Positions 1 to 62,494 of a stretch of 64,000 nt of DNA are shown here, one piece after another; the first letter of the stretch is position 1, and every line of letters begins with the position of its first letter. The notes under the pieces were generated by a model. That model was not told where the DNA came from, made no database searches, and worked only from the letters and a program-made list of their open reading frames with translations. Position numbers and translations under genes: made by a program. This DNA is from Octopus bimaculoides (lineage: Eukaryota). The DNA lies in the NCBI RefSeq assembly GCF_001194135.2, contig NC_068985.1:94701647-94765646 (forward strand). Reading direction: 5' to 3'.

Positions 1-175
1 TTCCCTTGTTCGAAAATATAAGGACACAGATCGTATTGTATAGCCAGCTGGAGACGATGTCTCCTGGGGCTAAATTACAGCAACATTCGTCCTAAACTAG
101 GACTGCCATGTTATGTTGTCAAAAAATCTCTACTACAAAGTATTTTCTGCCTATGAACACCCTTCAAAATATACT
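1..175 (+). repeat. Partial copy of HHR-associated repeat family E (HHR part would lie upstream of the window)
   Basis: atagccagctggagacgatgtctcctggggctaaattacagcaaca matches 15888-15940 and the reverse complement of 52830-53010 and 53590-53760. Confidence 0.65.
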
Positions 176-5487: not shown

Positions 5488-6080
5488 AGATGTCGCACAG
5501 TATACAATATCGTGAGGTTGTTGATTGAAGATAGTGTCCACTAGGGGTTTGTAATGTTTGTCAAGTCACAACAGGTAACTCAGACAGACAGTACTTTACA
5601 CAATATACGTGCAGTTCCAAATAATGCCGACTTTTGCAATACATCTAGACTGTAGGGCATTCCTAAGGTTTTCAGATGTTTTTTTTTTTTTTTTCAGACT
5701 GGATGGTATTGAAACGAATGCCCCGATGACAATAGGGACAACATTTTTATGTTCGACTCTCGTAGCTGCCACATTTTAACGATCTCAATTCTCAGACCTC
5801 TATATTTATCAAATTGTTCTCTCTTTGTCATGATGATGTGTTGATCTCTTGGCACTGCTACGTCGATTACTAGGGACTCTTCTTTGTCCCTCCTAAAGGT
5901 TACTATGTCCAGCCTTCGGGGCTCTAACACTTTGTCTGTCTGGAAATCAAAATCCCAGAGGATTTTTGCCTTCCCCTTTTCGTCCATTACCTTTTACGGT
6001 GTATGTTGGTACCAAGCACCCGAAACCTCATATCCATACTACGCCATAGTAGCTAATGGAGGTTTTGGGCTACTTTGTCG
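5488..6080 (-). mobile_element. 5'-truncated R4/Dong-type LINE, restriction-like endonuclease C-terminus and 3' UTR
   Basis: RHDKVAQNLH; KILWDFDFQTDKVLEPRRLDIV..LVIDVAVPRD..KY (degenerate PD-(D/E)xK); PIVIGAF; LQKSALFGTARILCKVLSV*; 3' end runs into (TAA)n on the minus strand. Confidence 0.85.
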
Positions 6081-6932: not shown

Positions 6933-7304
6933 TAGGAGTGGCTGTGTGGTAAGTAGCTTGCTTACCAACCACATGGTTCCGCGTTCATTCCCACTGCGTG
7001 GCACCTTGGGCAAGTGTCTTCTACTATAACCTCGGGCAGACCAAAGCCTTGTGAGTGGATTTGGTAGACGGAAACTGAAAGAAGCCCGTCGTATGTGTGT
7101 GTGTGTGTTTGTCCCCCCAACATCGCTTGACAACCGATGCTGGTGTGTTTACGTCCCCCGTAACGTAGCGGTTCGGCAAAAGCGACCGATAGAATAAGGA
7201 CTAGGCTTCCAAAGAATAAGTCCTGGGGTCAATTTGCTCGACTAAAAGGCGGTGCTCCAGCATGGCCACAGTCAAATGAGTGAAACAAGTAAAAGAGTAA
7301 AAGA
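6933..7304 (+). mobile_element. SINE family A, full length with internal (TG)n
   Basis: tRNA-like head (tggctgtgtgg, gcgttcattccc), internal microsatellite, 3' end ggcggtgctccagcatggccacagtcaaatgagtgaaacaagtaaaaga. Confidence 0.9.
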
Positions 7305-9358: not shown

Positions 9359-9816
9359 CGATAATAATAATAATAATAGGAGGATATCTCGCGCTACTAC
9401 ATAGCCATTATCTCTCGTTGTTGCTCTCTCTCTCACGCTCGCTCTCCCTCCCTTTCTCTGTCACTTTCTATCCCTCTCTCTTGCTTTCGATATTTGCTTG
9501 TCTTTACTTGTTGCTTATGTTGTTTATTCACATGTGTTTAGCTCCGATCAAACTTGTAGTTATTGCAAATATTTATTAACTAACATCAGAGAAGAATTTG
9601 GAAATTAATCTAAATTGAAACACGTCATTATACAAAGAAGTCTGTGATTTACAGAGAATGTTTGCTGGAAATGTACAGAAGTGTTGTGAATAGAAAGAAA
9701 TTAATCACAATGTATANNNNNNNNNNNNNNNNNNNNNNNNNNNNNNNNNNNNNNNNNNNNNNNNNNNNNNNNNNNNNNNNNNNNNNNNNNNNNNNNNNNN
9801 NNNNNNNNNNNNNNNN

Positions 9817-11919: not shown

Positions 11920-12346
11920 GCACTCCGTCGGTTACGACGACGAGGGTTCCAGTTGATCCGATCAACGGAACAGCCTGCTCGTGAAATTAACATGTAAGTG
12001 GCTGAGCACTCGACAGACACGTGTACCCTTAACGTAGTTCTCGGGGAGATTCAGCGTGACACAGTGTATGACAAGACTGGCCCTTTGAAATACAAGTACA
12101 ACAGAAACAGGAAGAAAGAGTGAGAGAAAGTTGTGGTGAAAGAGTATAGGAGGGTTCGCCACCATACTCTGCCGGAGCCTTGTGGAGCTTTAGGTGTTTT
12201 CGCTCAATAAATACTCACAATGCCCGGTCTGGGAATCGAAACCGCGATCCTATNNNNNNNNNNTACTCACAATGCCCGGTCTGGGAATCGAAACCGCGAT
12301 CCTATGACCACGAGTCCGCTGCCCTAACCACTGGGCCATTGCGCCT
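11920..12346 (-). mobile_element. SINE family C, full length
   Basis: Minus-strand head gcgcaatggcccagtggttagggcagcggactcg...ggtttcgattcccag (A and B boxes); body homologous to 53085-53441. Confidence 0.9.
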
Positions 12347-15489: not shown

Positions 15490-15496
15490 ATATACT

Positions 15497-15650
15497 TTTA
15501 TTCTTTTACTTGTTTCGGTCATTTGACTGCGACCATGCTGGAGCACTGCCTGGTGTTATTTACTCGCAAGTGCTTTAGTCGAAGGAATCGACCCCACGAC
15601 TTATTCTTTGTGAGCCTGGTACTTATTCTATCGCTTTTCTTTTTCTGAAC
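15497..15650 (-). mobile_element. SINE family A, 3' half
   Basis: cttttacttgtttcggtcatttgactgcgaccatgctggagcac...gacttattctttg...tacttattctatcg. Confidence 0.8.
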
Positions 15651-15960
15651 CTCGTTCAGAGATTTATTATTGCTTGTTTACACTTTTTCGAGATCAGTGA
15701 CTTTTCGACACTGGAAAAAGGATATATGTATTTGCATTGGGACCCCTTCGCATCGAAGACCGGTGATTGTCGTATGCTGACGACGGGTAAATTTCCAGAA
15801 ACCTCGGTCCATGCGTATCACGTCAGGTCAAAGATGGGAAGGATGGCTTCCCTTTGCAAATACTGATAGGGCACAGAAAGAGTGTCAATAGCCAGCTGGA
15901 GGAGGTGTTCTCCTGGGGCTACAAGTTACAGCATCATCCACCCTTTGTGGTTAGCCACAT
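15650..15960 (+). mobile_element. HHR-containing repeat family E (retrozyme-like), about 310 bp
   Basis: Collinear with the minus strand of 52828-53790 after removal of the SINE C insertion: tcgttcagagattt, cgagatcag.gact, gtatttgca, ggtgattgt, HHR, aaagatggga, ttccc, cctggggcta. Confidence 0.7.
15771..15815 (+). ncRNA. Minimal type I hammerhead ribozyme motif, core intact
   Basis: Stem I CGTATG/CATGCG (6 bp), CTGACGA, C, stem II GGG-taaatt-TCC, A, GAAA, stem III A-CCTCGG-T, cleavage triplet GTC (15807-15809). Confidence 0.7.
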
Positions 15961-16079
15961 CTAAGTGGCAAATATACTTCACGTTATATATATATATATA
16001 TATATATNNNNNNNNNNNNNNNNNNNNNNNNNNNNNNNNNNNNNNNNNNNNNNNNNNNNNNNNNNNNNNNNNTATATGA

Positions 16080-17440: not shown

Positions 17441-17544
17441 TGTTTCTATGCCATGTTCTCTTGCTGCCCTGTCTTCTAAATCTCATTATATCAACAACAT
17501 ATATCGTGTAATTGTCCCGTTTGCAATTCATATTATACTTATAT

Positions 17545-17856
17545 TCATTTACTTGTTTCAGTCATTTGACTGCGGCCATGCTGGAGCACCACCTTTAGTC
17601 AAACAAATCGACCCCAAGACTTATTCTTTGCAAGCCTAGTACTTATTCTATCGGTATCTTTTGATGAACCGCTAATTTACGGAGACGTAAACACACCNNN
17701 NNNNNNNNNNNNNNNNNNNNNNNNNNNNNNNNNNNNNNNNNNNNNNNNNNNNNNNNNNNNNNNNNNNNNNNNNNNNNNNNNNNNNNNNNNNNNNNNNNNN
17801 NNNNNNNNNNNNNNNCATACATACATACATACATACATACATACATACATACACAC

Positions 17857-33496: not shown

Positions 33497-33699
33497 NNNN
33501 NNNNNNTTGTCCCCCCAACGTCGCTTGACAACCGATGCTGGTGTGTTTACGTCCCCGTAACCTAGAGGTTCGGCAAAAGACACCGATAGAATAAGTACTA
33601 GGCTTCCAAAGAATAAGTCCTGGAGTCGATTTGCTCGACTAAAGGCGGTGTTCCAGCATGGCCGCAGTCAAATGACTGAAACAAGTAAAAGTGTAAAGA
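33312..33699 (+). mobile_element. SINE family A, full length with internal (TA)n and gap
   Basis: Homologous end to end with 6933-7304. Confidence 0.9.
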
Positions 33700-45879: not shown

Positions 45880-46095
45880 TTCCGTGTGTGTCAGTGTCTG
45901 TCCAGCCACGATCGCTTGACATCCGATGGTAGTGTGTTTACGTCCCCATAACTTAGCAGTTCGAGCAAAGATATTGATAGAATAAGAGCTAAGAGCTAGG
46001 CTTAGAAAGAATAAGTCCTGGAGTTGATTCTGCTCGACTAAAAGCGTGTGCCCCAGCATGGCTGCAATCAAACGACTGAAACAAGTAAAAGTATC
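45880..46095 (+). mobile_element. SINE family A, 3' half
   Basis: atcgcttgaca...gtgtttacgtcccc...gaataagtcctgg...cagcatggctgca...gactgaaacaagtaaaa. Confidence 0.8.
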
Positions 46096-47025: not shown

Positions 47026-49270
47026 GATATATATATATATGTATATATAAACACTACGCGCTCATTATTATATTAGGAGATATTTGTAGATACATCGTGA
47101 GTTTTTGAAGATTATTTTGTAACGATGATTTGGAAATAACTGAAGAGCCAGGTGAATTCATGTGAATTCATACATGAGTATTTAATTGTTTTAAACAAAA
47201 GTTCAGTGAAATATTTGAAATGAATCTGGCATCTAATCATTTTGTTTAAACTACTTTGTAAATTATATGAATGACATATGTTTATCGTTTCTGGCACTGC
47301 GGTAAGAGTAGTACCGCTCGAAGATGCATCAACGATAATGTTAACTTAGAATGATACAAACCATCGTACGGGGATGGCCTTCACACTTATCAAGATGTCG
47401 TCTTCCGGGTTTATCTGTGCGAGAGTTACTCAAACATATCAATGAGTGCTCCATTTATGTATCCGTGAAAGGGCTGTTGACTCCTTATTTAGTTCATCCA
47501 AACATGTAGATTTGTATTTTCTCTCGATTTTAGAGGGAACCCATCAACGCTACAAAGTTATTGACGGTTCATACACCAACAGACATCCGTAGAAACAGAA
47601 ATGTTATGTATGATTAAAAATAGATTGCTTAATATTTTATAACTTGTCAATGATTATTGCAAACACCACAGTCATTGTATTTCTAAAAAAGGCTTCAATC
47701 TCTCTCTATATAAATTTGACATAGGCGATTCAGTCTTGTCTTGGGATTTACGGTCAAACGGCTGGGTGGAATTGCGCGAAAAAATACACAGATGTGTAGA
47801 ATAATCCAGTGGTGTTGCTGGGCTTTGTATGATTTTAATAGCTCCCATGGTTACCGAGATAATGTACTATAATAATACTCTTGTGCTTATGAATGAGAAT
47901 GGATGGGGTGATAGAGGAATAAGGAAGGACGGGGGTGATGTCATACTTGGTAGTGGGATGATGAAAATTGTACGCTGAAAACAATAAATCAAACAGCGTT
48001 TCAACTCTCTGAATATATGTCTGTCTATGTAAAAGGGGTATGTGAATGCATTTGTGTATGTGCGTGTGTGCGCGTGTGTGTGTGCGCGCAATGGAGGTGG
48101 GATGGTTCATCTTTGTTCGCTTAGTATTTGGGTTTATTTTTTGATTTAGTTGAATCTTGGTTGTTGTTTTTTTTTTGTTGGTCAGTTATTTTTAGCGTTT
48201 TGACAGAAAAAAAGTCGTTCTGAAATTGTTTTTTAACGTAAGCGTGCCCAAACAAGTCGAATGCTTACACAGAGCAGGTTTTATAGCCACATCATCTAAC
48301 CCGACAGGGTGAAACCGGGCTTAACTGCTAGTATGCATATAACAGCGGCAGATGTTATTGCATAGCTTTACTCTAGCTCTGTTCTCTCATATCAATACTA
48401 GAAGTGGAGTCTTATCCAAAACGGCAATCTGAAAAATCCCTTGTCATTCATCAACATTCCAACAGTTTCAACAAGTTAACAACATAACATTTTCCTTTTA
48501 TTTGGTTCAGTCATGTGATTGCGACCATGCTGCAGCACCGCTTTGAAGGCGTTAGACGAATAGTCAGTTACATCAAATTGCAGATCACAAAACAAATAGC
48601 CAAATTATCATCATATCATATAGGCTTACACAAAGGAGGTGTATGAAGTATGATTTAGTCCTGGATATATTAGACTTTAAACAAAACACTGAACAGTCGC
48701 GGTTTGAACAACTTTAGTCATAGTTCGACTTAACCACTCAAACAGAACGAACTGAATAAATATAAAAAAAGTGTGAGCTAAGTCAATTACGTAATCCTTG
48801 GATGATAAGCAAAGAAAACCATAATTCATTATCTATTTGGAGAAATATCTAATAATTCAGAAATAAATAGCTCATATACTTTAAAATCAACCTCTCAACA
48901 TTCATTGTTTGGTTATAAGTAAATGCAGTGTATACATATTGAGAACGAAAGCAGCGAGCAGTATGTATAATTCAAAAAGACACGAGAACGCTAAGACTAA
49001 ATGGCAAATATATAACAATGACATGAAATACATTATACAACATATATGTTTACATATCAAGTATACCACTTTCAGAAATAAGTGGTGAGCATGATGTGAA
49101 TTAAATCTGAATGCAGAGTCAATTACTTTGTCATGCAATTTCACTTCATTAACAAACATGCTATCATCTCAATATTATACAAATTTGAAGACTGGGTTGA
49201 GATGAAATAAGTTCTGTTGTGGAGCTTTATTTGCTAAAGTTATCTTTTAAAGTTAAATTATTTTCATAAT

Positions 49271-51050: not shown

Positions 51051-51149
51051 GTCAGTATTTATACCGGCTGTTTAGGTTTTAAGTTCAAATTCTAGGGATA
51101 TTGTTTTTCCTCTTGCAGTGTTGATCGATATCATGGACCTTAGTTGATA

Positions 51150-51400
51150 TGCCGACGGGTATATCGCGTAGTGGTTAAGAGCGCAGCCTACTAGCCCCAA
51201 GATTCGAGTTCGATTCCAGGCAGTGACCTGAACATTAACGATAATAATAATGATAACATCGAAAAAATACCTTAGGAATGAGAATCCAGGTTCGAAATTT
51301 CCCCAAGACACCTGAAGAAGGCTGGAGGGTATATCAGCTGAAACGTTGTGTTAACAACAAACAAGATGAGGACAAATATCCGTCGAATGTAAATAACGTA
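51150..51400 (+). mobile_element. tRNA-headed short element carrying an HHR motif
   Basis: A-box-like tcgcgtagtgg, B-box gagttcgattcc, (AAT)n spacer, then HHR at 51307-51352. Confidence 0.65.
51307..51352 (+). ncRNA. Minimal type I hammerhead ribozyme motif
   Basis: Stem I GACAC/GTGTT, CTGAAGA, A, stem II GGCTG/CAGCT, GAAA, palindromic A-CG-T, cleavage nucleotide T51347. Confidence 0.65.
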
Positions 51401-52579
51401 ACTAATGCTTAGTCGATGATATCGACAAAATTAAAAGATTGTTTTTAACCTGTTTAATTAGCCATTATTCGTACCAATGTTGTTGTTGGTGCTGCTAGTG
51501 GTATTGTTGTTGTGAGTCAGATGCGTACACTGGATTCTTACTATCAACAACTATTATCGAATGTTTCGTTAACATTCAGAACTCATTTAAATGTTTGATA
51601 ATTGATAAAGCTGTTTTGACATCACGGTGGTCTTTTCTCACGCTACCACCATACCATAACACCATAGTTCTCTGTCCTTTTCACCCTGAGTTTAAAACTA
51701 TCGGCATCACGTCATGCGTACACATGTTTCACACTGTCACTCCAAAATTTTCTTTAATCGGTTTTTCTACTGTCACGTCAAATGAATATAAGATAACCCT
51801 TTATTGAAAGAGAAACGTATGACCTTGCAGACATGAACTTTGGTTTACATTACCACTGTCAGTTGTTATATTTCTTTCCCTTCCAGTCGTGCAATTGTCT
51901 GTTGGAAATTTTCTGCATTAAAGTTACAGAAATATAATTGATAGCAGCAACAATATAAAATTGATATGAATTAAATTAACATTGGATAAAAGCCTCTAAA
52001 TGCATTATCGAAAATAAAATAATTAAAATAACACTGACGGACTTCACTGTTTTGCCATCAAATAATGTCTGAGCTGGAAGTGACATCTGACATTTGAAAA
52101 AAAAAATGTAGAAAAAAATATCTATAATTTCTAAAATGGTTTTAAACGATGCTCTTCAATAATTTTCACCAAAAAATCTAAGATATAATCAGATTGCATG
52201 TTATACTTGTGTGTGAGCTTCAGTCTGGTAATAACATTCGCACCATTTAACAGTCAGAGAGTATACTGAATTGTGAAATATAATCAGCATAAGGAATGTA
52301 CAGAATTACACACACAGACACACATACACACATACACACACATGATCGCGCGCACACACACGCAATCACACATTTAGACGTACACATATATATTACTTAC
52401 ATACATGCATATACACACACATACGCGCGCGCACACACACACATGTTATTATGCCTCTACGTGTGTGGGTGAATAAAACATAGACAAATAAATATTTTAA
52501 TGGAGGCATGATGCTGTTGGTACTTTGAGGCATCGAATTTCTCAGAAAACTTTCAGATATATATTATCTTATTTTATTC

Positions 52580-52783
52580 TTTTACTCTTTTATTTGTTTC
52601 AGTCGTTTGACTGCAGCCATACTGGAACATCGCTTCTAGTCGAACAAACCGATCCCAGGACTTATTCTTTGTAAGCCTTGTACTTATTCTATCGGTCCTT
52701 TTTGCTGAACCGTTCAGTTACGGGGACGTAAACAACCCAACATCGGTTGTGAAGTGATAGTGGGGGACTAACACAGACGCAAA

Positions 52784-52790
<7 letters not shown>
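52580..52790 (-). mobile_element. SINE family A, 3' half, followed by (GA)n
   Basis: tgtttcagtcgtttgactgcagccat...gacttattctttgtaagcc...gttacggggacgtaaac. Confidence 0.8.
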
Positions 52791-52830
<40 letters not shown>

Positions 52831-53043
52831 TTGTTTTCAATCTCTGGGCGAGAGATATACAGTAACAGTACTGAATAGTAAAGGTTATTTGCCAACATTA
52901 TGTGGCAGTCCTATAAAGGACGATGTAACTGTTATTTAGCTCAAGGAAAACATCTTTTCCAGTTCGCTACCGACACACACTTTGTGCCCGTATAGCATAT
53001 GCAAGGGAGGTCATCGCTCCCGTCTTTATCCTTACTTGATACA

Positions 53044-53084
53044 CACAGACCTAGGTTTCTGGATAGTTACTCGTCCTCAGTGTG
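53044..53084 (-). ncRNA. Minimal type I hammerhead motif, core intact, stem II weakened
   Basis: CACA-CTGAGGA-C-GAG-taacta-TCC-A-GAAA-CCTAGG-TC-TGTG; perfect palindrome ACCTAGGT, GTC triplet. Confidence 0.68.
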
Positions 53085-53469
53085 GGGGCGCAATGGCCCA
53101 GTGGTTAGGATCACGGTTTCGATTCCCAGATCGGGCGTTGTGAGTGTTTATTGAGCGAAAACACCTAAAGGTCCACGAGGCTCCGGTAGGTGTGTTGGTG
53201 GTGAACCCTACTGTACTCTTCCACCACAACATTCTCTCACTCTATCTTCCTGTTTCTGTTGTACCTGTATTTCAAAGGCCAGTCTTGTCACACTCTGTAT
53301 CACGCTGAATCTCCCCCGAGAATTACGTCAAGAGTACACGTATCTGTGGAGTGCTCAGTCACTTGCACGTTAATTTCACAAGCTGGCCGTTCCGTTGATC
53401 GGATCAACTGGAATCCTCGTCGTAGTAACCGACGGAGTGCCAAGCATGCAAGCAACCAACCAACCAACC
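53085..53469 (+). mobile_element. SINE family C with (CAAC)n tail and 13-bp TSD
   Basis: TSD cgtcctcagtgtg (53072-53084) / cgccctcagtgtg (53470-53482); body matches 11920-12346. Confidence 0.9.
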
Positions 53470-53781
53470 CGCCCTCAGTGTGAAACAATCACCAGTTAAT
53501 GATAAAGGCTCTCTTCACTTGCAAATACTATATATTTTTTAAGCGACACACAGAGTCGCTGATCTCGTAAAGAGAAAAACAACTTGTTTTAAATCTCTGA
53601 ACGAGAAATATACCGCAACAGTACCAAATAGTAAAGTTTATTTGCCAACATAATGTGGCAGCCCCATGCAAGTAGCATGTTACTGTTATTTAGCTCCAGG
53701 AAAACATATTTTCCATTTGCCTACCGGCACACAGTTTATGCCCGTAGAGTAAGGGAGGTCATCGCTCCCAACTCTAGCATT

Positions 53782-53820
<39 letters not shown>

Positions 53821-53904
53821 NNNNNNNNNNNNNNNNNNNNNNNNNNNNNNNNNNNNNNNNNNNNNNNNNNNNNNNNNNNNNNNNNNNNNNNNNNNNNACA
53901 TGAG

Positions 53905-57499: not shown

Positions 57500-58420
57500 T
57501 TTCCTTCTTTTCGAGGGAATACACAACTGTCTCCATGATAAGGGATATATTTGCGCCGTCGATGAATCCATCTCTCAAAATCACCTTTGAAAAAATTTCA
57601 GATGTCTCCTGTGGTAGCCAGACCTTCACGTACACTTTCACATCGTTTGTGTTATCGGATCTTTGTCATCAGTAACGAATCTTCAATGGACTAAATCAGT
57701 GGGAATTTTTGAACGCCAGATACTAACTGAACGATAGACGGGTTACTCTACCAGCTCAAATTGGCGATTGGCTGATTTGTGGCCAAAAATATGTGTGATG
57801 TCGTGTTGTGGCGGTAAATATGTCTCCTTTTTACATTCTTCTTCGGTTTCATCCGTAGGGATTTTGAGTGTTTCAAACCACAGGTCGTTGTTCAGGGTAC
57901 AGCCACATTCAAAACAATCAAAACAGCTACACTCTTGTAATTACCAATGCAGTTATCATGACTTCCTTCAACGTTCATTAGCTTTTGAAATACTTAGAAA
58001 ATGTGTGACGTCAGTCCATAGACTAATCTTTCATTTCTGGAATATAACTGCCCAATCACGCTTCAGCATCTCTTACCACATTGGATGAAGTGGTTTTATT
58101 CATTGGCTTCAATAACTTGCAGCAAAGAAGACTGCCACCCATCTATCCTTCAAATAGATATCAACAATTTGCACACACTTTCCGATACAAAAGATTTCCA
58201 ACTTTGTAGGTAATGTATTGTGGACACAGTATAGTTGTGCAGTCACCTCAAGAATTGCGACTCGTTTGTTCGCGAGAATGAAATCATTCAGTGGCTGGTC
58301 ATTCATATCAGTGATCGTAGTTGATGGACTTCCACAGTGTTGCTTGTCTTCAATGCCAGATTGCTGTCCGTTTAAAATTCTTGATCGCTCTGTACACATT
58401 CATTTTGTTAATGATCATTC
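57500..58420 (-). mobile_element. Decayed mariner transposase
   Basis: GIEDKQHCGSPSTT..FILANKRVAILEV (HTH), VVRDAEA*LGSYIPEMKD*SMD*RH (TGDETW..SMEW region), DVKVYVKVWL..FS and HGD near the C-terminus. Confidence 0.7.
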
Positions 58421-60815: not shown

Positions 60816-60980
60816 TCGTCGATTGTTTACGTTCCTGTAACCTAGCGGGTTGACAAAGAGAACGATAGAATAAGTACCCGACTTAAGAATATGTTCTGTA
60901 ATGGATTTGTTTCACTGGAAATCTTTCGAGGTGGTGCTCCATCATGGTAGAAGTCTAGTGAGTGGGAGCAGTGAAAGACA
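60815..60980 (+). mobile_element. SINE family A-related 3' half, degenerate
   Basis: tgtttacgttcctgtaacctagcgg...cgatagaataagtac...ggtggtgctccatcatgg. Confidence 0.6.
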
Positions 60981-61861: not shown

Positions 61862-62261
61862 AACGAAGTTGATTTAATAAATGAGTGGACAAGATGTGAA
61901 ATATTAATATTCGACGTAAAATTGTTCAAAATAAAATTAGAGATGGTTGAATGGACACGAGTACAGATTTGTTGATAGGAAAACCACTAATGACATTTCG
62001 TGTCTGTCGTAAAAATATTTCAGTCGCGTTAGTTCATTCATTTGAAATGACTGTGCTAGTCCTTTAACTGTTCTGCGTAAACAGCTGTGCGTACGAGGGT
62101 TTTCTAATAGTTAATAATCTTATAGCTATCGAAGCTCATGCTACCGAAATGGAGAATTTGGCGAGGAAAGTCTCGCTCTATGTTTGAAAAGAAATTAAAA
62201 ATTGTCACCGTCTTAAGTGTTCAGATTTTGTTAAAACCACCATCAGTGCTTCAATGTTACA

Positions 62262-62453
62262 CTTTTACTCTGTTACTTGTTTCAGTCATTTGACTGAGGA
62301 CATGCTTGAGCACCGCCTTTAGTCGAACAAATCAACCTTATTCTTTGTAAGCCTAGTACTTATTCTATCGGTCTCTTTTGCTGAACCGCTAAGTTACAGA
62401 AACGTAAACACACCATCATCGGTTGTCAAGCGATGCTGGCGGGGACAAACACA

Positions 62454-62494
<41 letters not shown>

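What the first reader, a model, noticed from the sequence alone, without database searches (positions are those of the whole stretch)
52828..53790. Retrozyme-like tandem repeat: ~355-bp monomers carrying a type I hammerhead ribozyme (family E)
Seen: two direct copies start at 52828 and 53581; subtracting the 398-bp SINE C insertion gives a 355-bp monomer. The minus strand holds CACA-CTGAGGA-CGAGTAACTATCCA-GAAA-CCTAGG-TC-TGTG. Homologous sequence occurs at 15650-15960 (starting at a different point of the monomer) and at 1-175. There is no ORF. Established: animal retrozymes are non-coding tandem monomers of a few hundred bp with minimal type I HHRs whose palindromic stem III supports dimeric cleavage, producing unit-length and circular RNAs. 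Inference: this is a dispersed, possibly undescribed retrozyme family in this (probably cephalopod) genome.
Basis: partly seen in the sequence, partly recalled or inferred. Interest (0 to 1): 0.85.

Follow-up and report, generated by a model that had tools for sequence, protein, structure and literature searches.

The report
Decayed hammerhead-bearing short tandem retroelement
A 355-bp non-coding repeat, seen as a 1.6-unit tandem and as two scattered copies, carries a small self-cleaving-RNA (hammerhead) motif of the kind found in Penelope-like retroelements and animal "retrozymes"; it looks like an old, worn member of that known class, not a new kind of element.

Summary
Family "E" is a 355-bp non-coding unit. 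It occurs as a head-to-tail 1.6-mer (52828-53790, minus strand) split by a 398-bp SINE with a 10-bp target-site duplication, plus single copies at 15650-15985 and 1-154.

Both copies that cover the region carry a type I hammerhead-like motif with all 12 fixed core positions intact. Helix I shows compensatory changes, and the helix III segment is palindromic, so it forms only in a dimer. The motif is the best-conserved block between copies that are only 65% identical overall. My minimal-hammerhead descriptor expects 0.02 sites per shuffled window and finds three.

Cautions:
- No Rfam hammerhead model matches, even at E<=10.
- Helix II is weak, with a C.A at the 10.1/11.1 position and one mismatch per copy.
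- Only one motif is visible per locus.
- The copies are old: K2P 0.18 between adjacent units and 0.43-0.55 between loci.
- No other genomic copies or RNA data could be reached.
- The host organism was not identified.

No RT or endonuclease ORF lies nearby, and the direct 355-bp junction argues against a pLTR-ORF-pLTR structure.

Verdict: most likely a decayed non-autonomous, Penelope-type hammerhead element (retrozyme-like). It is a new member of a known kind. Activity and circular RNA are untested.

The parts
53581..53790 (-). Copy A: the 5'-truncated upstream unit of the tandem (210 nt). It begins just 3' of the expected hammerhead position. Its 5' side is replaced by (TA)n at 53787-53820 and an N gap at 53821-53897.
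   Evidence: blastn gives 81% identity to copy B. Alignment gives 84% and K2P 0.18. Sequence read.
53483..53580 (-). Copy B, 5' part of the full 355-nt unit on the minus strand: from the unit junction to helix I of the hammerhead.
53085..53482 (+). Secondary insertion of a tRNA-headed SINE (398 bp including one TSD copy). It splits copy B at the helix I/core boundary. TSD CCTCAGTGTG lies at 53075-53084 and 53473-53482.
   Evidence: Sequence. A second copy at 11920-12345 is 89% identical.
52828..53084 (-). Copy B, 3' part: the hammerhead motif and the downstream hairpin-rich body. It ends at ...AAAACAAGTT next to (AG)n at 52788-52828.
53044..53084 (-). Hammerhead-like motif of copy B: CACA / CUGAGGA / C-GAGU-AACU-AUCC-A / GAAA / CCUAGG / UC / UGUG. 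Predicted cleavage is after C17 (GUC^U), between 53048 and 53047.
   Evidence: Pattern match at 53048-53080. Relaxed descriptor hit. The CM built from B and C scores it 59.7 bits. Dimer cofold forms the 8-bp ACCUAGGU helix between two copies of the motif.
15650..15985 (+). Copy C: about 0.9 unit, circularly permuted relative to B, so it runs through the unit junction. Its 5' end is fused to the 5' part of another SINE through the microhomology CGTTCAG. Its 3' end abuts (TA)n and an N gap.
15771..15815 (+). Hammerhead-like motif of copy C: CGUAUG / CUGACGA / C-GGGU-AAAU-UUCC-A / GAAA / CCUCGG / UC / CAUGCG. Helix I is 6 bp. Predicted cleavage lies between 15809 and 15810.
   Evidence: Pattern match at 15777-15809. 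It passes the strict minimal-hammerhead descriptor. Pair counts.
1..154 (+). Copy D: the 3' part of a unit, cut by the window edge. There is no significant homology beyond about 154.

Best explanation
Family E is a short (355-bp), non-coding, non-autonomous retroelement of the hammerhead-bearing Penelope-like / animal 'non-LTR retrozyme' class. The copies seen here are old and decayed.

**Inferred mechanism for active members**
1. A multimeric transcript is made from head-to-tail copies.
2. The hammerhead has a short open helix I (4-6 bp), a 4-bp helix II and no stable helix III of its own.
3. The palindromic A-CCUAGG-U segments of two motifs pair to form an 8-bp helix III (a double hammerhead).
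4. Each motif cleaves after GUC, releasing unit-length 355-nt RNA with 5'-OH and 2',3'-cyclic phosphate ends.
5. A cellular tRNA ligase (RtcB type) can circularise this RNA.
6. A Penelope-like RT/GIY-YIG enzyme encoded elsewhere copies it into AT-rich or microsatellite DNA as more-than-unit or 5'-truncated partial tandems.

**Shown here:** the repeat structure, the closed 355-bp unit, the intact core, the helix I covariation, the palindrome, and the absence of any ORF.

**Inferred:** transcription, cleavage, circularisation and the identity of the mobilising enzyme.

The copies in this window are most likely inactive relics.
For: 1. **Unit structure.** The closed 355-bp unit junction is seen twice: at the junction of units A and B, and collinearly inside copy C. 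A and B are each other's closest relatives (K2P 0.18, against 0.43-0.55 between loci), as expected for one more-than-unit insertion.
2. **Core conservation.** All 12 fixed core positions are identical in B and C, although the copies are 65% identical overall. The hypergeometric P that 14 differences in 55 columns spare all 12 is 0.018. The best-conserved 33-nt window of the whole B-C alignment is exactly the hammerhead (85%).
3. **Helix I.** Two pairs changed on both sides (A-U to G-C, C-G to U-A) and two on one side. Of all cells, 88.5% are paired in register, against 54% or less when the partner is slid by 1-3 columns.
4. **Chance test.** The descriptor gives 3 sites against 0.02 expected per shuffled window.
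5. **Match to published Penelope minimal-hammerhead traits** (PMC4209133): short helix I, an unpaired nucleotide after A9, and a palindromic 15.2-16.2/loop 3. The dimer cofold forms the helix III between two copies of the motif.
6. **Non-coding, no partner ORF nearby.** No ORF or Pfam domain in or near any copy. GC is 40-45% and unit size is 355 bp, within the ranges reported for metazoan retrozymes (PMC7229834; bioRxiv 10.64898/2026.07.22.740005).
5'. *(numbering continues)*
7. **RNA structure.** The body holds conserved hairpins with two compensatory pairs and some G-U pairs that favour the hammerhead-sense strand. The monomer folds better than shuffles, z = -2.1.
8. **RNA-mediated origin.** Copy C is joined to the 5' part of another SINE at a 7-nt microhomology, as a reverse-transcriptase template switch would give.
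Against: - No Rfam hammerhead model matches at gathering score, or at E<=10 on short pieces.
- The position equivalent to the normally conserved G10.1-C11.1 pair is C.A. Read another way, there is a bulged C plus an extra A before G12, which is not a described variant in the papers read.
- Helix II has only 4 positions and one mismatch in each copy. Minimum-free-energy folds of single motifs do not give the hammerhead shape.
- Only two sequences carry the motif, so the shuffle control of the covariation count is not significant (122/500).
- Only one motif is visible per locus, so unit-length excision from these loci is not demonstrable.
- The antisense strand folds even better than the sense strand (z = -3.4), so the stability signal is not strand-specific.
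- No further copies, no autonomous partner and no RNA evidence could be obtained.
Confidence: 0.6

Rival explanations
1. The segments are solo or truncated pseudo-LTRs (terminal non-coding parts) of an autonomous Penelope-like element, not an independent non-autonomous family.
For: The motif has the minimal Penelope-type architecture (PMC4209133). Most such motifs in genomes are single and derive from truncated elements (same paper). Partial tandems, 5' truncation and insertion next to (TA)n or AT-rich DNA are Penelope hallmarks (PMC8557442, PMC11167929), and two copies abut (TA)n. Retrozymes and pLTRs are sister sequences in frogs (bioRxiv 10.64898/2026.07.22.740005).
Against: The unit closes on itself after 355 bp with no ORF between units. 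This is seen at two independent loci. No RT or GIY-YIG domain was found in stop-free segments of 60 aa or more across 1-32 kb and 46-61 kb. (TA)n is very common in this window (12 loci, and it flanks most assembly gaps), so adjacency to it is weak evidence.
Confidence: 0.2
2. Family E is an ordinary old interspersed or minisatellite-like repeat. The hammerhead resemblance is fortuitous or long dead and never had a role.
For: There is no Rfam hit. Helix II is imperfect, with C.A at its base. Single-motif folds do not adopt the hammerhead. Only two sequences are available, so covariation statistics are weak. The loose core pattern is not enriched in the window.
Against: The structured descriptor is about 100-fold enriched over shuffles. 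The motif is the most conserved block between copies with K2P of about 0.45. Every difference within the 33-nt core-to-cleavage-site block falls at a position the hammerhead consensus leaves free, and helix I changes are compensated.
Confidence: 0.15
3. It is a SINE-like element mobilised by a LINE, like the hammerhead-carrying Sm-alpha element of schistosomes, rather than by a Penelope-like enzyme.
For: The window is full of SINEs. Another hammerhead-like motif sits inside a tRNA-headed SINE-like element at 51140-51400. The chimeric SINE-E junction suggests template switching by some reverse transcriptase.
Against: Family E has no tRNA-like head (ARAGORN finds nothing; no Rfam tRNA/5S/7SL hit). 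It has no simple-repeat or poly-A tail of its own. It occurs as a head-to-tail partial tandem, which LINE-driven SINE insertion does not produce.
Confidence: 0.05

Closest known systems
Minimal hammerhead ribozymes of metazoan Penelope-like elements (Cervera & de la Pena 2014, PMC4209133)
   Same: Type I topology, short helix I (4-6 bp), an unpaired nucleotide right after A9, a palindromic helix III segment that can only pair in a dimer, and a location in a non-coding repeat arranged head to tail. Most genomic copies are single and highly divergent.
   Different: Helix II is 4 bp rather than 6-8 bp. An extra A lies between helix II and G12, so the base of helix II reads C.A. No RT/GIY-YIG ORF is attached. 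Helix III keeps a 6-nt palindrome, as in the Drosophila, rotifer and shrimp variants, rather than none.
Metazoan non-LTR retrozymes (Cervera & de la Pena 2020, PMC7229834; Li, Clavereau & Pollet 2026, bioRxiv 10.64898/2026.07.22.740005)
   Same: Tandem non-coding units of a few hundred bp (355 bp here), low GC (40-45%), one type I hammerhead per unit, no LTR, PBS or PPT, and a mix of dispersed monomers and short arrays. Amphibian members also need dimeric hammerheads because of a weak palindromic helix III.
   Different: Described retrozymes carry canonical hammerheads (6-bp helix I, 4-bp helix II with G10.1-C11.1, loop-loop contacts) and are shown to give linear and circular RNA. Here the motif is minimal and atypical, only 1.6 units with one motif are visible, and no RNA evidence exists.
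Newt/salamander satellite 2 and Schistosoma Sm-alpha hammerhead repeats
   Same: Genomic repeats of about 330-350 bp whose hammerhead has an unstable helix III and cleaves as a double hammerhead. This rests on established knowledge summarised in PMC7229834 and PMC4209133.
   Different: Those are high-copy, well-conserved families with proven cleavage. Sm-alpha is a tRNA-derived SINE. Family E shows neither feature in the data available.

Membership tests
Hammerhead ribozyme (type I) | Conserved core C3 U4 G5 A6 N7 G8 A9 / G12 A13 A14 / A15.1-U16.1 / H17 | tested here: met
   Both motifs (53080-53048 minus, 15777-15809 plus) carry every core nucleotide. They differ only at N7.
Hammerhead ribozyme (type I) | Helix I formed by the 5' and 3' flanks (open helix, so type I), supported by covariation | tested here: met
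   Helix I is 4 bp in B and 6 bp in C. Two pairs changed on both sides and two on one side. With only two sequences, the shuffle control is not significant.
Hammerhead ribozyme (type I) | Closed helix II starting with the conserved G10.1-C11.1 pair | tested here: inconclusive
   A 4-position helix (G-C, G/A-C, G-U, U-A/U) has one mismatch in each copy. It is flanked by C and A, which gives C.A at the 10.1/11.1 position, or a bulged C plus an extra A before G12.
Hammerhead ribozyme (type I) | Helix III | tested here: inconclusive
   No stable hairpin is possible in a single motif (2-nt loop). The palindrome ACCUAGGU forms an 8-bp helix between two copies of the motif in the B dimer cofold. In C the palindrome has a central mismatch (ACCUCGGU).
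Hammerhead ribozyme (type I) | Match to curated covariance models (Rfam Hammerhead_1, _3, _II, HH9, HH10) | tested here: not met
   No hit at gathering score, nor at E<=10 on 1.2 kb, 76 nt and 66 nt. The second, more typical minimal motif at 51312 is also missed, so these models may not cover minimal variants. No positive control could be run.
Hammerhead ribozyme (type I) | Site-specific self-cleavage | not testable with these tools
   Needs in vitro transcription of monomer and dimer constructs.
Metazoan non-LTR retrozyme | Head-to-tail tandem units of about 150-450 bp (51-972 bp in the 2026 survey), each with a hammerhead, two or more per locus | tested here: inconclusive
   The 355-bp unit and the head-to-tail junction are confirmed. 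The array is 1.6 units, and the upstream unit's hammerhead position is lost in (TA)n and a gap. The other loci hold one unit or less.
Metazoan non-LTR retrozyme | Non-coding, no LTR/PBS/PPT, low GC | tested here: met
   Stop-free stretches are 71 aa or less, with no Pfam match or homologue. GC is 0.40-0.455.
Metazoan non-LTR retrozyme | Expressed as unit-length linear and circular RNA | not testable with these tools
   No transcriptome of the host was accessible.
Metazoan non-LTR retrozyme | Canonical type I hammerhead with loop-loop tertiary contacts (invertebrate members) | tested here: not met
   Helix I is short, with no recognisable internal loop. The architecture is that of the 'atypical minimal variants' which PMC7229834 sets apart from retrozyme hammerheads.
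Penelope-like element (pLTR) | Repeat flanks a single RT + GIY-YIG ORF (unit of about 3 kb or more) | tested here: not met
   No Pfam domain was found in stop-free segments of 60 aa or more across 1-32 kb and 46-61 kb. Units join directly after 355 bp. Degenerate fragments under 60 aa were not examined.
Penelope-like element (pLTR) | [quoted passage not shown] | tested here: inconclusive
   Met: helix I, the nucleotide after A9, and the palindrome. Not met: helix II length. G-C is present only if both C and A are treated as unpaired (criteria from PMC4209133).

The most novel reading that the evidence does not exclude
Family E is a previously undescribed retrozyme family of a lineage (possibly cephalopod) where none has been reported in the literature I could search. 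Its younger copies elsewhere in the genome form arrays that are processed into 355-nt circular RNAs. The hammerhead doing this would tolerate a conserved C.A pair (or flanking bulges) at the base of helix II, which would be a natural core-adjacent variant not covered by current models.
Probability: 0.25. Interest if true: 0.5.

Novelty: new member of a known kind. Interest (0 to 1): 0.3.

Why it matters
If active copies exist, the host would join the animals known to make abundant ribozyme-derived circular RNAs. The family would also add an unusual helix II base (C.A) to the catalogue of natural hammerhead variants, one that curated models miss. It would be one more case linking short hammerhead repeats to Penelope-like elements. 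Taken on its own, this window shows only worn relics of a motif class already known in thousands of copies in many animal genomes, so the finding is mainly useful for annotation.

Tried and rejected
**Searches that returned nothing**
- Rfam at gathering score and at E<=10 on the region and on short pieces found no hammerhead, tRNA or other relevant family.
- Two scans of metagenome contigs, with a strict and a relaxed family E hammerhead pattern, gave 0 matches.
- I concatenated all stop-free six-frame translations of the four copies into one pseudo-protein, to fish out spurious ORF calls on other copies. None scored.
- Host identification failed. A retrotransposon-like ORF gave no exact record and no homologue, so 'cephalopod' stays unverified.
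- A Pfam scan of stop-free segments of 60 aa or more found no family across 1-32 kb and 46-61 kb.
- ARAGORN found no tRNA-like gene.
- A covariance model built from the two motifs finds only those two in the window.

**Weak or negative results**
- Copy D shows no significant homology beyond position 154.
- With two sequences, the shuffle control of the covariation count is not significant.

**Ideas rejected**
- A composite 'abundant SINE + E' element. The relative orientation differs between the two loci, and seven other copies of that SINE have no E next to them.
- Treating (TA)n adjacency as strong evidence for Penelope-type integration. (TA)n occurs 12 times in the window and flanks most assembly gaps.

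Full report
**Observation**

The region reads as described. blastn of the SINE-free monomer against the window recovers five matches:
- the unit itself (53083-52828 and 53580-53467);
- a second direct copy (53789-53581, 81% identity);
- two remote segments (15759-15921 at 75%, and 41-135 at 77%).

Alignment extends the remote segments to 15650-15985 and 1-154.

The interruption at 53085-53482 is a genuine SINE insertion:
- it has a tRNA-like head;
- it is flanked by a 10-bp target-site duplication, CCTCAGTGTG (53075-53084 and 53473-53482);
- a second copy lies at 11920-12345 at 89% identity.

Excising it leaves exactly 355 bp.

On the minus strand the locus reads: (TA)n, then copy A, then copy B, then (CT)n.
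- Copy A is 210 nt and begins just 3' of where a hammerhead would lie.
- Copy B is the full unit.
- This makes 1.6 units with one visible hammerhead.
- The 5' side runs into an N gap (53821-53897).

Copy C (15650-15985) is circularly permuted relative to B. It runs collinearly through the same unit junction as A into B. The 355-bp unit is therefore closed on itself at two independent loci.

**The motif**

- Copy B (minus strand, 53084-53044): CACA CUGAGGA C GAGU AACU AUCC A GAAA CCUAGG UC UGUG.
- Copy C (plus strand, 15771-15815): CGUAUG CUGACGA C GGGU AAAU UUCC A GAAA CCUCGG UC CAUGCG.

The features that fit a hammerhead are these.
- All 12 fixed hammerhead positions are present in both copies; they differ only at N7.
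- Helix I pairs in both copies (4 bp and 6 bp). Two pairs changed on both sides and two on one side.
- In register, 88.5% of cells pair. When the 3' partners are slid by 1-3 columns, at most 54% pair.
- The helix III segment A-CCUAGG-U is a perfect 8-nt palindrome in B. It cannot close a hairpin, but it forms a helix between two copies of the motif in a dimer cofold. This is the classical double-hammerhead arrangement.

**Is it more than chance?**

The loose pattern CTGANGA..GAAA..TH is not enriched (13 matches against 6.2 +/- 4.2). I therefore wrote a descriptor modelled on the published minimal hammerhead. It requires helix I of at least 4 bp, an optional unpaired base at either end of helix II, helix II of at least 3 pairs, a palindromic A..U segment, and UH.
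- The strict form hits copy C and one unrelated site, against 0.025 sites per dinucleotide shuffle.
- Allowing one helix II mismatch also recovers copy B, giving three sites against 0.02 expected and a maximum of 1 in 300 shuffles.

Conservation points the same way.
- B and C are only 65% identical overall (K2P 0.48).
- The most conserved 33-nt window of their alignment is exactly the hammerhead, at 85%.
- The chance that 14 differences in the 55-column block spare all 12 core positions is 0.018.

**Reasons for caution**

- No Rfam hammerhead model matches at gathering score, or at E<=10 on pieces of 1.2 kb, 76 nt or 66 nt. I could not run a positive control. The second, more typical minimal motif at 51312 is also missed.
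- Helix II has four positions with one mismatch in each copy: A.C in B and U.U in C.
- Helix II is flanked by C and A. This gives either C.A where G10.1-C11.1 is normally conserved, or the Penelope-type bulged nucleotide after A9 plus an unexplained extra A before G12.
- Single-motif minimum-free-energy folds do not adopt the hammerhead shape.
- With only two sequences, the shuffle control of the covariation count is not significant (122/500).

**Age and state**

- A and B are each other's closest relatives (K2P 0.18). Copies from different loci differ by 0.43-0.55.
- If A and B arose in one more-than-unit insertion, that insertion is old. It was later hit by a younger SINE.
- These copies are best read as relics.

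**Body of the element**

- RNAalifold on the four copies finds four conserved hairpins downstream of the hammerhead.
- Two pairs are compensatory (G-C to A-U and A-U to G-C). A few G-U pairs would be C.A on the other strand.
- The 355-nt monomer, cut at the predicted site, folds better than shuffles (z = -2.1).
- The antisense strand folds better still (z = -3.4), so this signal reflects palindrome-rich DNA as much as RNA selection.

**Coding capacity and neighbours**

- The longest stop-free stretches inside the copies are 53-71 aa.
- They have no Pfam family and no homologue in the large protein collection.
- No Pfam domain at all was found in stop-free segments of 60 aa or more across 1-32 kb and 46-61 kb. 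No recognisable RT or GIY-YIG ORF therefore lies beside any copy.
- Together with the direct 355-bp junction, this argues against a pLTR-ORF-pLTR structure at these loci.

**Integration clues (weak)**

- Two copies abut (TA)n. Penelope-like endonucleases prefer AT-rich or microsatellite targets (PMC8557442, PMC11167929).
- However, (TA)n occurs 12 times in this window and flanks most assembly gaps.
- Copy C is fused to positions ~5-147 of the abundant SINE through a 7-nt microhomology, CGTTCAG. A reverse-transcriptase template switch would give this junction. So would microhomology-mediated repair.

**Comparison with known systems**

Cervera & de la Pena (PMC4209133) define the minimal hammerheads of metazoan Penelope-like elements by these traits:
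- helix I of 4-5 bp;
- a large helix II;
- G10.1-C11.1;
- a palindromic 15.2-16.2 segment or loop 3.

They note that these motifs are extremely variable, mostly single, and poorly active in vitro. Family E shares the first, second and last traits. It differs in helix II.

Metazoan non-LTR retrozymes (PMC7229834) are tandem units of 150-450 bp with GC below 50% and type I hammerheads, and they give linear and circular RNA. A 2026 preprint (10.64898/2026.07.22.740005) reports the following:
- consensus lengths of 51-972 bp;
- many dispersed monomers;
- sister relationships between retrozymes and Penelope pLTRs.

Family E fits the size, GC content (0.40-0.455), lack of coding capacity and arrangement. 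It lacks the canonical hammerhead of invertebrate retrozymes and any RNA evidence.

The papers I could search on octopus and cephalopod repeats list Penelope-like elements as abundant. The one I searched for those terms, the O. vulgaris repeat annotation (PMC13282606), mentions no ribozymes or retrozymes; PMC8967140 was searched only for 'Penelope'. No paper held both a cephalopod term and retrozyme or hammerhead findings. I could not confirm that the window is from a cephalopod.

**Conclusion**

The most likely reading (about 0.6) is a decayed, non-autonomous, Penelope-type hammerhead element, retrozyme-like in organisation. It is a new member of a known kind.

The rivals are:
- a solo or truncated Penelope pLTR (0.2), which overlaps conceptually with the main reading;
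- a fortuitous or long-dead motif in an ordinary repeat (0.15);
- a LINE-driven SINE-like element (0.05).

Activity, circular RNA, copy number and the mobilising partner remain untested. The decisive steps are a genome-wide census with covariation analysis, RNA-seq junction analysis, and monomer-versus-dimer cleavage assays.

Noticed in passing
window 51307-51352 (+), inside 51140-51400: A second, unrelated hammerhead-like motif: GACAC CUGAAGA A GGCUGG-AGGGUAUA-UCAGCU GAAA CG UU GUGUU. It fits the published Penelope minimal hammerhead better than family E does: 5-bp helix I, a bulged A after A9, a 6-bp helix II and the palindrome ACGU. Its 10.1/11.1 pair is G.U. It sits in the body of a single-copy tRNA-headed SINE-like element about 1.5 kb from the tandem, on the opposite strand and converging on it. 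The descriptor expectation is 0.02-0.025 sites per shuffled window. Rfam gives nothing, and there is no second copy in the window.
   Followed up: partly
window 15491-15665: Copy C of family E is joined to the 5' part (about positions 5-147) of the abundant SINE through the 7-nt microhomology CGTTCAG. This could be a reverse-transcriptase template-switch chimera or microhomology-mediated repair.
   Followed up: partly
window 52571-52790 and eight other sites (7098-7304, 15491-15659, 17530-17693, 33512-33697, 45887-46091, 48495-48543, 60823-60920, 62254-62467): A SINE of about 220 bp is present in 9 copies at 72-84% identity. It is often followed by microsatellites and is the dominant repeat of the window.
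   Followed up: partly
window 11920-12345 (-) and 53085-53482 (+): Two copies (89% identical) of a ~400-bp tRNA-headed SINE ending in a (CAAC)n-like tail. The copy at 53085 has a clear 10-bp TSD. ARAGORN and Rfam do not recognise the tRNA-like head.
   Followed up: partly
15 N gaps across the window (for example 9717-9816, 16008-16072, 53821-53897): Thirteen of 15 assembly gaps are flanked on at least one side by microsatellites, mostly (TA)n or (CA)n. (TA)n of 16 bp or more occurs at 12 loci in 64 kb. This looks like a draft short-read assembly that breaks at microsatellites.
   Followed up: yes
window 5694-5987 (-) and 58109-58399 (-): Two short ORFs resemble, by eye only, the C-terminal part of a non-LTR retrotransposon protein (KILWDF..IDVAVP..) and the N-terminal HTH of a mariner-type transposase. 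Neither gave a Pfam hit at E<=0.01. The first gave no homologue or exact record.
   Followed up: partly
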